Source of the DNA: Magallana gigas
Lineage: Eukaryota
Direction of reading: 5' to 3'
Length of the DNA stretch: 64,000 nt
NCBI RefSeq assembly: GCF_963853765.1
Contig: NC_088855.1
Location: forward strand, 53,878,001 to 53,942,000
The notes beneath the pieces are model-generated. The model did no database searches, had not been told where the DNA came from, and saw only the letters and a program-made list of their open reading frames with translations. This document shows, in pieces, positions 6,031-7,666 of this stretch. Made by a program: the position numbers and the translations under genes. How positions within the stretch are numbered: position 1 is the stretch's first letter; each line of letters begins with the position of its first letter.

Positions 6031-7666
6031 CTAACCAAAGACATTGGTTATTTGTGACTCGGTGGCATATTGAGATAGATCGATTTCTGTTAAGGAGTGT
6101 CTGCTTCCCAATGAATGCATTGCGTCATTGATGTCGTCATAATGGAACTGAACGGATGTCCCAGATCCAGCGCCCCCATACGTGAAAACAAACAATAGCA
6201 CCAACTGGTTGTCTATGACGAAAAAGCTTGGATTGCCACTGTCACCTACAATTTTACTCTCATAGTTTGCTTGGCGGTATGACAAAATTGGGGCTGACAG
6301 GCTCACCATTTTGTTGTTCATTGCATTCAATTCGTCAACTAGAGCTTTCTCTTCGTAATCAGTGCTCAAAACCGGAAGAGCATGGTGCAGGTGGGTGCTA
6401 TAGATCTTAGTAAAATTTCTTGGCAAAACTTTAGCAAAAGTGATGGAAGAAGGAACATCGTGATCGAGAAGTCCGATTACCATGTCGTAACCACTCATGC
6501 AGTTGGCATGCGCAGGAACGGGAAGGGGGACAGACTTAATAATCCTCCGGTCCACCACTTTATTATTCATGTCGAGAAATCGCATGGGTAGTATTGACAG
6601 GTATGTTGTAATGTCTTGCCCAGACGGCATGACGAGGAGATATAAGCGTGCCCGCTCTACGCGACTGACCTTTGCTGTTCCAAGGTGAAATGCAAGTTAA
6701 ATCTATGTCATGGGCCCAGCAGTTTGGGTTTCTGATGTAAATTCCGTGTATGTGATCTTGTTTGGAGAATATTTTTATGGCCTCCGAAACCTGTGTTCCA
6801 CTCGACTGAGTTCTTAGAAGCCGACTGTCTATTCCATGAGCAATTGCTTCGAACACTCTGGTCTCTGTGTTGCTGAGAGGTTTGGGTGATGTGGATGTAC
6901 TGTGGTGGATGATACTATGACATACTCCGTTTGAACCAGTTCCTACCACTGATAGAGTCTCATTGTGAACATAAAACGCATCACAAATAGCCCTCTGGTA
7001 GTCACAAACACCTAATCAAAAGAAAATATTGGAAAGGTAAAAGTGGACATGCAGGTGGTATACAAGAGGTTGTTATTGCTGTTGGAGTACCTACCGTTAT
7101 GAACCTTCCCGTCGTTGGTACAAACGGTTATATGAGAATACTGCTGACAGACTCCATGTTGTACATCTAGTAGACATTCAGCCAGAGTTCGACCATCAAC
7201 CGAACAAACTTTGACATAAAACAAAACGATATTCAATTTTTTTTTTAAATATCTAAAAAAATTATGTAATTGCAATCATGACTTTTATTAATTCATATTT
7301 GTATAAACAAAAGGTGTTAGGAATTGAAACATCCGCGAAAAACAAGATGGTTCTAGTACCGTTTATCAGATTATTGTATTATCCAGGGGTTATAACTAGT
7401 ATTATGCGCTTGGATAGTTTTTTGAACCTTTTTTAATGTACTCGAAGCGCAACAAAATTACCGAATTTGTTTGAAGAACTACAAATTTGTTCTCTGTATC
7501 AAATACAGAGAATATGAAGGAGAAAAACCATATATACTCACATTACTTTGGACATCTATAAAAAGGACAAAAGAAAGAAGGCAGCTGTGAAAATTGTTTT
7601 CATAACTTTACCTTGAGTAGTGAATAAAATCCACGGAACTAATATATATAGATTTTGAACCCCCAT
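6031..7666 (-). CDS. Secreted Kazal-like domain + trypsin-fold (clan PA) serine protease, ~382 aa, with a 1-nt frameshift at ~6586-6588 (pseudogene allele or assembly error)
   Basis: Exon 1 7666-7612 (signal peptide MGVQNLYILVPWILFTTQ); exon 2 7208-7095; exon 3 7011-6031. Both introns are GT-AG phase 1. Cys pattern C-x8-C-x8-C-x10-C-x6-C-x20-C (TVCTNDGKVHNGVCDYQRAIC) is Kazal-like. Triad motifs: GTLISPRHAVWARHY (His), GYDMVIG (Asp), GDSGNP (Ser). Removing one C from 'acc c atg' joins ...NIPVNTT to MRFLDMNNK and gives 1149 nt = 383 codons. Confidence 0.8.

What the first reader, a model, noticed from the sequence alone, without database searches (positions are those of the whole stretch)
6031..7666. 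Secreted serine protease fused to its own Kazal-type inhibitor-like domain
Seen: after splicing, the signal peptide is followed by ECLLDVQHGVCQQYSHITVCTNDGKVHNGVCDYQRAICDAF...GVC, then a His/Ser/Thr linker, then a protease domain with an intact His/Asp/Ser triad. The Kazal-like domain spans an intron, so no single ORF in the track shows it. Established: the spacing C3-x10-C4-x6-C5 and the VC..DG.T/V..N..C...A.C pattern are typical of Kazal/follistatin-type inhibitor domains; P1 is the second residue after C2, here Gln in both paralogs. Inference: a cis-autoinhibited protease whose Kazal module acts as a built-in pro-domain or switch. I do not recognise this architecture as a named family.
Basis: partly seen in the sequence, partly recalled or inferred. 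Interest (0 to 1): 0.78.

Follow-up and report, generated by a model that had tools for sequence, protein, structure and literature searches.

The report
Oyster Kazal-linked protease of phage origin
A real, spliced oyster gene joins an animal Kazal-like module to a serine protease domain that molluscs apparently took from a phage or bacterium long ago; whether the Kazal module plugs its own protease is untested and looks unlikely.

Summary
On the minus strand, 6031-7666 is a three-exon gene. RNA contigs from another oyster individual show both GT..AG introns removed (7209-7611 and 7012-7094). The protein has a signal peptide, a six-cysteine Kazal-like module, a Ser/Thr/Pro linker and a roughly 280-aa chymotrypsin-fold domain with His/Asp/Ser intact.

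The Kazal call is supported. A profile of 24 mollusc modules hits agrin (1.4e-13), follistatin (5e-7) and ovomucoid (0.01). All 50 best Foldseek matches are Kazal or follistatin domains.

The protease domain matches no Pfam, NCBIfam or PHROG model. Its relatives, 33-50% identical, lie in at least 184 viral contigs and 122 bacterial loci, mostly Verrucomicrobiota, Planctomycetota and Lentisphaerota. Mollusc sequences form one clade inside that diversity. The three-exon structure is shared with Lottia and Pecten, so the transfer and fusion were ancient.

The frameshift is a 1-nt insertion at 6585. It is present in the reference and in one other DNA run, and absent from the RNA allele. The upstream copy is a pseudogene.

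Cis-autoinhibition is untested. The P1-equivalent residue is hypervariable, the loop varies from 8 to 15 residues, and seven orthologs carry glycosylation sequons in it. The HtrA1 precedent also argues against it. An earlier scan note (s1-375834) proposed a bacterial origin for this same stretch.

The parts
7612..7666 (-). Exon 1, coding part. It carries the ATG (7666-7664) and a hydrophobic signal-peptide-like N-terminus, 18 codons plus 1 nt. The transcript reaches at least 7714.
   Evidence: The RNA contig of X16 covers 7612-7714 and is joined to 7208. Translation is, and the hydropathy peak at residues 5-14. Oyster orthologs begin the same way.
7209..7611 (-). Intron 1, 403 nt, GT..AG on the minus strand, phase 1.
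   Evidence: Joint 7208/7612 in an RNA contig, with ends CT..AC on the + strand.
7095..7208 (-). Exon 2, 114 nt. It encodes the end of the signal peptide and the first part of the Kazal-like module (C1, C2, C3 and the DGKVHNG motif).
   Evidence: RNA joints lie on both sides.
7012..7094 (-). Intron 2, 83 nt, GT..AG, phase 1. It sits inside the Kazal-like module, just before C4.
   Evidence: Joint 7009/7093 with cut +2 in an RNA contig. The Lottia and Pecten orthologs have an intron at the same position.
6031..7011 (-). Exon 3, coding part with the stop at 6031-6033. It encodes Kazal C4-C6, the linker and the whole protease domain, with no intron.
   Evidence: ORFs and translation are. RNA contigs cover 6003-6326 and 6419-7009.
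6920..7176 (-). Kazal-like module of the follistatin/agrin type, from C30 to C87, interrupted by intron 2.
   Evidence: Cysteine spacing is. The profile of 24 orthologous modules against PDB sequences gives agrin 1.4e-13, follistatin 5e-7 and ovomucoid 0.01. Nine of 35 orthologs match Pfam Kazal_2 at E <= 0.1 (best 1e-4); the score shown for P0004 (20.5 bits) is under the 22.8-bit cutoff. The 50 best Foldseek matches are all Kazal or follistatin domains.
6884..6919 (-). His/Ser/Thr/Pro-rich linker of about 12 residues.
   Evidence: Translation is. The equivalent stretch of the ortholog model has low pLDDT, 61-74.
6034..6883 (-). Protease region. A conserved helical N-terminal extension is followed by a chymotrypsin-fold domain. 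The His codon is 6611-6613, the Asp codon 6484-6486 and the Ser codon 6238-6240.
   Evidence: The AF2 model of ortholog P0181 has pLDDT 90.8. Foldseek against the PDB gives trypsin-like proteases at about 1e-10. VIA-align gives Z 15-17 over model residues 133-356. The triad columns are at least 90%, at least 90% and 100% conserved in 108 sequences.
6585..6585 (-). A one-base insertion in the reference allele that shifts the frame between the ...VNTT and RFLD... segments. It is a segregating null allele.
   Evidence: The base is left out in the X16 RNA contig and present in DNA run X4. Paralog B and all orthologs read T-T-L-R-F at this point.
1..2074 (-). The 5' part of a tandem pseudogene copy. 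The rest lies up to about 1.8 kb upstream of the window.
   Evidence: blastn identity to the main copy is 84-90%, with two insertions. The protease part has five TGA and one TAG stops. Kazal C4 is replaced by Ser.

Best explanation
This is a genuine oyster gene for a secreted chimeric protein.

Shown: it has three exons that are spliced in RNA. It has a hydrophobic N-terminal leader. It has a six-cysteine Kazal-like module of the follistatin/agrin subtype. It has a short Ser/Thr/Pro linker. It has an intronless chymotrypsin-fold domain of about 280 aa whose His, Asp and Ser (GDSGNP) are conserved across molluscs and across the prokaryotic and viral relatives.

Inferred with good support: the protease domain came from a phage or a PVC-type bacterium by one ancient horizontal transfer, before gastropods and bivalves split. 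It was then fused to an animal signal peptide and Kazal exons.

Inferred, weaker: the protein works as an active secreted endopeptidase. The Kazal-like module would act as a disulfide-stabilised binding, targeting or folding module, as in HtrA1, factor I, agrin and SPARC. It would replace the Ig-like or virion-attachment N-termini of the phage proteins, and would not act as a canonical plug of its own active site.

In this genome the reference allele is a null because of a 1-nt insertion. An intact allele is transcribed at a low level. The neighbouring tandem copy is dead.
For: Gene model: the splice joints and the intact-frame allele are seen in RNA contigs.

Kazal-like module:
- Profile hits to agrin, follistatin, FSTL3 and ovomucoid.
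- Only Kazal or follistatin folds among the 50 best Foldseek rows.
- Six invariant cysteines.

Protease:
- A confident model.
- S1 fold by Foldseek and VIA-align.
- A conserved triad.
- ESM features point to S1 peptidases.

Origin:
- 1359 representative clusters, almost all metagenomic.
- 184 viral and 122 bacterial loci, mostly PVC phyla.
- In phages the domain is fused to a tail-sheath-stabiliser-like N-terminus next to the portal gene, or lies next to a tail-fibre-like gene.
- Named eukaryotic hits are all molluscs.
- Molluscs form one clade (SH-aLRT 100), placed inside the prokaryotic and viral rows on the midpoint-rooted tree.
- The same three-exon structure, with an intronless protease exon, is found in Lottia and Pecten.

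Non-inhibitory reading:
- The C2-C3 loop is variable in sequence and length and often carries glycosylation sequons.
- The HtrA1 precedent.
Against: - No enzymatic or binding data exist.
- The relative position of the Kazal module and the active site could not be inspected.
- Hypervariable contact residues are also typical of true Kazal inhibitors.
- The tree is unrooted, so the direction of transfer rests on distribution and on the intronless domain, not on topology alone.
- Expression is very low in the two polyA runs sampled: 2 and 0 reads.
- Pfam Trypsin models and the Kazal_2 gathering threshold are not reached.
Confidence: 0.6

Rival explanations
1. One reading: a cis-autoinhibited zymogen. 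The Kazal loop (CQQY...) would sit in the S1 site of its own protease until the linker is cut or the module is displaced.
For: - The module is a true Kazal-like fold placed directly N-terminal to an S1 protease on a short, flexible, cleavable-looking linker.
- Classical Kazal inhibitors such as ovomucoid are among the profile and fold hits.
- The pLDDT of the module is higher in the full-length model (84-93) than alone (75). This could reflect an interdomain contact.
Against: - The P1-equivalent position has 10 different residues in 24 sequences, while the protease active-site motifs are nearly invariant.
- The C2-C3 loop is 8-15 residues long and never the canonical 7. Seven of 24 loops carry N-glycosylation sequons.
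- The region is predicted to be helical rather than an extended canonical loop.
- The best sequence matches are to the non-inhibitory follistatin and agrin type.
Confidence: 0.2
2. A bifunctional immune effector. The Kazal module would inhibit foreign (pathogen or parasite) proteases in trans, while the protease domain acts independently.
For: A hypervariable reactive-loop equivalent is the pattern seen in inhibitors that track outside targets. From my own knowledge, molluscs use Kazal inhibitors in defence. The mollusc inhibitor CmPI-II is among the fold hits.
Against: The loop length, the sequons and the follistatin-type affinities argue against it, as for the first rival. There is only one module per protein and no expansion of the family: the genome has two copies, one of them dead.
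Confidence: 0.1
3. A non-catalytic protease-like binding protein (pseudoprotease or lectin-like), as in some S1-fold proteins.
For: - S1-fold non-enzymes appear among the structural neighbours: the UmbA chain of the umbrella toxin particle, HGF, haptoglobin and scabies mite inactivated paralogues.
- No curated protease HMM is matched.
Against: His, Asp and Ser, together with Gly-Asp before the Ser, are conserved at 90% or more, or invariantly, in 108 sequences from molluscs, phages and bacteria. That is hard to explain without catalysis.
Confidence: 0.05
4. The locus is a decaying remnant in this species and has no present function. This reading can coexist with the others, because it concerns this genome only.
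For: - The reference allele and an independent DNA run carry the frameshift.
- The tandem copy is a pseudogene.
- There are almost no reads in two polyA runs.
- An otherwise invariant Tyr is replaced by His.
Against: - An intact-frame allele is transcribed and correctly spliced.
- Only 4 of 98 conserved columns deviate, which is within the range of 0-6 seen in other orthologs. The triad is intact.
- A sequence 91% identical to it (P0185), with an open frame over its 339 aa, is seen in many runs.
Confidence: 0.15

Closest known systems
HtrA1/HtrA3/HtrA4 (vertebrate secreted S1C proteases with an N-terminal IGFBP-Kazal tandem)
   Same: Both have a signal peptide, then a Kazal-like module, then a linker, then a chymotrypsin-fold serine protease in one secreted chain. 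The Kazal-like segment of HtrA1 does not act as an inhibitor of the enzyme (PMC8509474).
   Different: This protein has no IGFBP module and no PDZ domain. Its protease domain is not an HtrA and matches no Pfam or NCBIfam model. The fusion is independent and mollusc-specific, and the protease belongs to a phage and PVC-bacterial family.
Follistatin/agrin/SPARC-type Kazal-like (FS) modules
   Same: Both have six cysteines with C3-x10-C4-x6-C5 spacing and the C..DG..Y...C....A.C motif. These are the best profile matches: agrin 1.4e-13 and follistatin 5e-7. The best fold match is FSTL3 Kazal-1.
   Different: This is a single module with no EGF-like FS subdomain. It has a long C5-C6 segment of 12-22 residues and a helical C1-C2 segment in the model. 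The Pfam Kazal_2 score is below the gathering threshold.
Classical Kazal inhibitors (ovomucoid third domain, SPINK1, mollusc CmPI-II)
   Same: The fold core superposes at rmsd about 2.3 A over 41 columns. The profile E-value to ovomucoid is 0.01.
   Different: The C2-C3 loop is 8-15 residues instead of 7. The C4-C5 spacing is 6 instead of 2-3. The loop is variable and often carries a glycosylation sequon. No inhibitory activity has been shown.
Uncurated phage and PVC-bacterial S1-like domain family (metagenomic proteins of about 405 aa with a Big_2 N-terminus)
   Same: The proteins are 33-50% identical over about 260 aa. They share the conserved N-terminal extension (Q-D/N-H ... Y-x-R-N-x-x-C-W ... 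I-S-P-W-N-S) and the same triad motifs.
   Different: The prokaryotic and viral proteins carry Ig-like (Big_2), laminin-G-like or tail-sheath-stabiliser-like N-termini. Those examined sit beside phage structural genes such as the portal, head-tail adaptor or a tail-fibre-like gene. The mollusc proteins carry a signal peptide and a Kazal-like module, have introns and are chromosomal.
Complement factor I (FIMAC module plus S1 protease)
   Same: A Kazal/follistatin-like module and an S1 protease lie in one secreted chain, and the module does not act as an inhibitor. This rests on my own knowledge and was not tested here.
   Different: Factor I has additional SRCR and LDLa domains and an S1A-type protease. 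It shares no sequence relationship beyond the fold.

Membership tests
Kazal-like domain (follistatin/agrin subtype) | Six conserved cysteines with C3-x10-C4 spacing and a C4-x6-C5 helix segment | tested here: met
   The window has C1-8-C2-8-C3-10-C4-6-C5-20-C6. The six cysteines are invariant in 24 orthologs.
Kazal-like domain (follistatin/agrin subtype) | Significant profile similarity to known Kazal domains | tested here: met
   The profile of 24 modules against PDB sequences gives agrin 1.4e-13, follistatin 5e-7, FSTL3 1e-3 and ovomucoid 0.01. All 50 listed hits are Kazal-type proteins.
Kazal-like domain (follistatin/agrin subtype) | Pfam Kazal_1 or Kazal_2 gathering score | tested here: not met
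   Nine of 35 orthologs match Kazal_2 at E <= 0.1, best 1e-4. The one score shown, 20.5 bits for P0004, is under the 22.8-bit cutoff. The oyster orthologs match nothing. The window's own module could not be scanned whole because it spans an intron.
Kazal-like domain (follistatin/agrin subtype) | Kazal fold (hairpin, helix, C-terminal strand) | tested here: met
   In the model of P0181:22-100 (pLDDT 75), the 50 best Foldseek rows are all Kazal or follistatin domains, with rmsd 1.6-4.9 A. E-values are weak (0.07-0.9), as expected for a small domain.
Canonical (standard-mechanism) Kazal inhibitor | A rigid reactive-site loop with C2-x7-C3 spacing, and inhibitory activity | tested here: not met
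   The loop is 8 residues here and 8-15 in orthologs. Seven of 24 loops carry sequons, and the model predicts helix at the start of the loop. Activity cannot be tested with these tools.
Peptidase family S1 / clan PA (chymotrypsin fold) | Double beta-barrel chymotrypsin fold | tested here: met
   Foldseek against the PDB gives E about 1e-10 and probability 1.00 to factor IXa, tryptase and trypsin. VIA-align gives Z 15-17, rmsd about 3 A and 180-200 aligned residues, including bacterial trypsins and V8 protease.
Peptidase family S1 / clan PA (chymotrypsin fold) | Catalytic triad in the order His, Asp, Ser, with a G-D-S-G motif | tested here: met
   W-A-R-H, Y-D-M and G-D-S-G-N-P are present in the window. 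The corresponding columns are at least 90%, at least 90% and 100% conserved in 108 sequences.
Peptidase family S1 / clan PA (chymotrypsin fold) | A match to a curated sequence model (Pfam Trypsin or Trypsin_2, NCBIfam) | tested here: not met
   No hit was found for the window pieces, for 35 mollusc orthologs or for the viral and bacterial relatives. The family is too divergent for these models.
Peptidase family S1 / clan PA (chymotrypsin fold) | Proteolytic activity | not testable with these tools
   This needs recombinant enzyme assays.
HtrA family (S1C) | An HtrA-type protease domain followed by PDZ domain(s) | tested here: not met
   There is no PDZ or HtrA model hit. The chain ends about 25 residues after the protease fold. 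The resemblance is in architecture only.
Horizontally acquired gene of prokaryotic or phage origin | A patchy eukaryotic distribution, a placement inside prokaryotic and viral diversity, genuine chromosomal integration and an intronless acquired part | tested here: met
   Named eukaryotic hits are only molluscs. The mollusc clade has support 100 and is flanked by starred viral and bacterial branches. The gene is spliced and lies on a chromosome-scale contig. The protease exon is intronless in oyster, Lottia and Pecten. The rooting and the donor are not resolved.

The most novel reading that the evidence does not exclude
A virion-associated protease of phages that infect PVC-type bacteria was captured by an early mollusc more than 500 million years ago (the age is my own inference). 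It was then domesticated by fusion to an animal Kazal module, and that module evolved into a built-in regulatory switch or pro-domain of the foreign enzyme. This would be a self-inhibited chimeric protease with no counterpart among curated families.
Probability: 0.15. Interest if true: 0.8.

Novelty: new variant of a known kind. Interest (0 to 1): 0.55.

Why it matters
This is a clean, testable case of an ancient transfer from a phage or bacterium to an animal. The acquired domain was kept for the whole history of gastropods and bivalves and was rebuilt as a secreted chimeric protein by exon fusion with an animal Kazal-like module.

It also exposes a large S1-like protease family with at least 1359 clusters at 50% identity. 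Pfam, NCBIfam and PHROGs do not model it, and in phages it sits beside or is fused to virion structural genes.

For oyster biology, the gene has a segregating null allele. This offers natural knockouts for asking what the enzyme does, for example in digestion, defence or matrix processing.

For protease biology, it is an independent second instance of the Kazal-plus-protease arrangement of HtrA1. It could help show what such non-canonical Kazal modules do.

Tried and rejected
- Pfam on the single-exon pieces gave nothing. The Kazal module is split by an intron and the protease family is too divergent. Orthologs and profiles were used instead.
- I first suspected a second frameshift in the signal peptide, because the ATG at 7604 runs into a TAG. 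The RNA joint 7612/7208 shows that stretch is intron 1, so the idea was dropped.
It gives no evidence either way.
- tblastn of a viral-type relative (P0013) against 50,697 GenBank phages found no match. The single-protein scan of IMG/VR also found none. The alignment-based scans succeeded.
- PHROGs and NCBIfam have no model for the protease domain.
- Literature searches for HGT plus Kazal plus mollusc, and for six ortholog locus names, found nothing on this family.
- The polyA raw-read runs X21 and X22 gave 2 and 0 reads, which is too few to measure expression or confirm junctions independently.
- Contamination was rejected. The gene has spliced introns, lies on a 29-contig assembly at C3:53.88 Mb, and has orthologs in more than 20 mollusc genomes.
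- A search for inverted repeats in the pseudogene copy found nothing that defines a transposon.
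Full report
**Anatomy**

The finding lies on the minus strand. Six-frame translation shows three coding segments:
- a hydrophobic N-terminus starting at the ATG 7666-7664;
- a Cys-rich segment at 7208-7095;
- a long open segment from 7011 down to the stop at 6033-6031, broken once by a frame change near 6586.

One RNA-library run from the same species (X16) gave contigs that join 7612 to 7208 and 7095 to 7011. 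The skipped stretches are 403 nt and 83 nt and end in GT..AG on the minus strand.

The same RNA contig lacks one base at 6585. A DNA run from a different study (X4) has the window's version. Comparison with the neighbouring copy and with orthologs shows that the reference carries an inserted base. Without it the text reads T-T-L-R-F, as in all relatives. The frameshift is therefore a segregating null allele, and an intact allele is transcribed.

Two polyA raw-read runs gave only 2 and 0 reads, so expression there is very low.

**Second copy**

The genome (564 Mb in 29 contigs, labelled oyster in the run records) holds only two copies. The other starts at window 2074 and runs past the window start. 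It is 84-90% identical. It has two insertions and six stop codons in the protease part, and Ser replaces the fourth Kazal cysteine. It is a pseudogene.

**Kazal-like module**

The window's module has the spacing C1-8-C2-8-C3-10-C4-6-C5-20-C6.

- *Pfam.* Pfam sees nothing in the separate exon pieces. Among 35 mollusc orthologs, nine match Kazal_2 at E <= 0.1 and two match Kazal_1. The best E-value is 1e-4. The one score shown, 20.5 bits for P0004, is under the 22.8-bit cutoff.
- *Profile.* A profile of 24 orthologous modules, searched against PDB sequences, is much clearer. It hits agrin at 1.4e-13, follistatin at 5e-7, FSTL3 at 1e-3 and ovomucoid third domain at 0.01. Only Kazal-type proteins appear in the list.
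- *Fold.* A model of the module alone (pLDDT 75) finds only Kazal or follistatin-type domains among the 50 best Foldseek rows, typically at rmsd 2.3 A over 41 columns. E-values are weak (0.07-0.9), as expected for a domain this small.

I conclude that the module is a real Kazal-like domain of the follistatin/agrin subtype.

**Protease domain**

The 199-aa C-terminal piece finds 1359 representative clusters in an exhaustive HMMER search. Language-model features point to S1 peptidases.

The closest full-length orthologs come from Saccostrea echinata and Ostrea edulis and are 72-74% identical to the window's protein.

A model of the Saccostrea protein built on a 108-sequence alignment has mean pLDDT 90.8. 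Foldseek matches trypsin-like proteases at about 1e-10. VIA-align gives Z 15-17 over model residues 133-356, to both animal and bacterial S1 enzymes.

In the window the catalytic motifs are W-A-R-H (His codon 6611-6613), Y-D-M (Asp codon 6484-6486) and G-D-S-G-N-P (Ser codon 6238-6240). The corresponding alignment columns are at least 90%, at least 90% and 100% conserved.

The window's allele deviates at 4 of 98 conserved columns. That is within the range of 0-6 seen in other orthologs.

No Pfam, NCBIfam or PHROG model matches the domain.

**Origin**

*Distribution.* Named eukaryotic relatives are all molluscs. They include bivalves (Ostrea, Saccostrea, Mytilus, Pecten, Mizuhopecten, Argopecten, Mercenaria, Mactra, Dreissena, Sinanodonta, Potamilus, Solemya). 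They also include gastropods (Haliotis, Lottia, Patella, Littorina, Batillaria, Babylonia, Gigantopelta). They carry only automatic names such as 'Kazal-like domain-containing protein' or 'Peptidase S1 domain-containing protein'.

*Non-mollusc relatives.* All other relatives are metagenomic. Scans found 184 relatives in IMG/VR viral contigs. They also found 122 in bacterial genomes, mostly Verrucomicrobiota, Planctomycetota, Lentisphaerota and Kiritimatiellota. These are 33-50% identical over about 260 residues.

*Setting in phages.* In viral contigs the domain follows Ig-like (Big_2) modules. In one case it follows a tail-sheath-stabiliser-like N-terminus next to the portal and head-tail adaptor genes. 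In another it lies beside a tail-fibre-like gene.

*Tree.* In a maximum-likelihood tree of 127 rows, the 23 mollusc rows form one clade with SH-aLRT 100 and a long stem. Several well-supported branches separate this clade from other bacterial and viral groups. Its internal order roughly follows mollusc phylogeny.

*Gene structure.* The Lottia and Pecten orthologs have the same three-exon structure. Intron 2 is at the same place in the Kazal module, and the protease exon is intronless.

*Conclusion.* The simplest account is one ancient transfer from a phage or a PVC-type bacterium into an early mollusc, followed by exon fusion and vertical descent. The tree is unrooted, so the direction rests on distribution, diversity and the intronless domain.

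**How it probably works**

The leader, the disulfide-rich module and the Ser/Thr/Pro linker indicate a secreted protein. The conserved triad indicates catalysis.

Indirect evidence leans against a canonical plug:
- The C2-C3 loop is 8-15 residues long and never the classical 7.
- The P1-equivalent position shows 10 different residues in 24 sequences, although the protease active-site motifs hardly vary.
- Seven of 24 loops carry N-glycosylation sequons.
- The models predict helix over C1-C2 and the start of the loop.
- The nearest sequence relatives are the non-inhibitory follistatin and agrin modules.

There is also a direct precedent. HtrA1, HtrA3 and HtrA4 have a signal peptide, IGFBP and Kazal modules and a trypsin-like protease. 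[quoted passage not shown]

My best reading is therefore an active secreted protease whose Kazal-like module replaces the phage attachment modules as a binding, targeting or folding unit. I keep cis-inhibition at about 0.2.

**Verdict**

Noticed in passing
window 1-2074 (continues about 1.8 kb upstream of the window; G000:C3:53877085-53877615 for the protease part): A tandem pseudogene copy of the same gene. It has two insertions relative to the main copy, at about window 795-1125 and from about 145 bp upstream of the window to 689. It has six stops, and Ser replaces Kazal C4. The duplicated unit extends about 900 bp past the 3' end of the gene.
   Followed up: partly
L008:6834-8771 (IMG/VR contig), L004:4950-6191: In phages the same protease-like domain is the C-terminus of a 646-aa protein. 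The first 217 residues of that protein match a tail-sheath-stabiliser PHROG, and the gene lies next to the portal and head-tail adaptor genes. In another contig the domain follows a Big_2 module beside a tail-fibre-like gene. This large family (at least 1359 clusters) has no Pfam, NCBIfam or PHROG model.
   Followed up: partly
P0003 (4782 aa, JGI contig of 429 kb): A giant metagenomic protein, labelled 'plastocyanin' by its source, contains two stretches of this protease-like domain at 35% identity.
   Followed up: no
window 6091-6093 region (codon for the residue in ...GSRHSLTE...): The window's allele has His where all 35 mollusc orthologs have an invariant Tyr. It is one of only four deviations at 98 conserved columns.
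   Followed up: partly
window 17508-17640, 18517-18648, 46476-46622: Three runs of N (133, 132 and 147 bases).
   Followed up: no
window 21183-28432: Another first-stage note on this window describes an ARM-TIR-SAM protein (s1-375895). I did not examine it.
   Followed up: no
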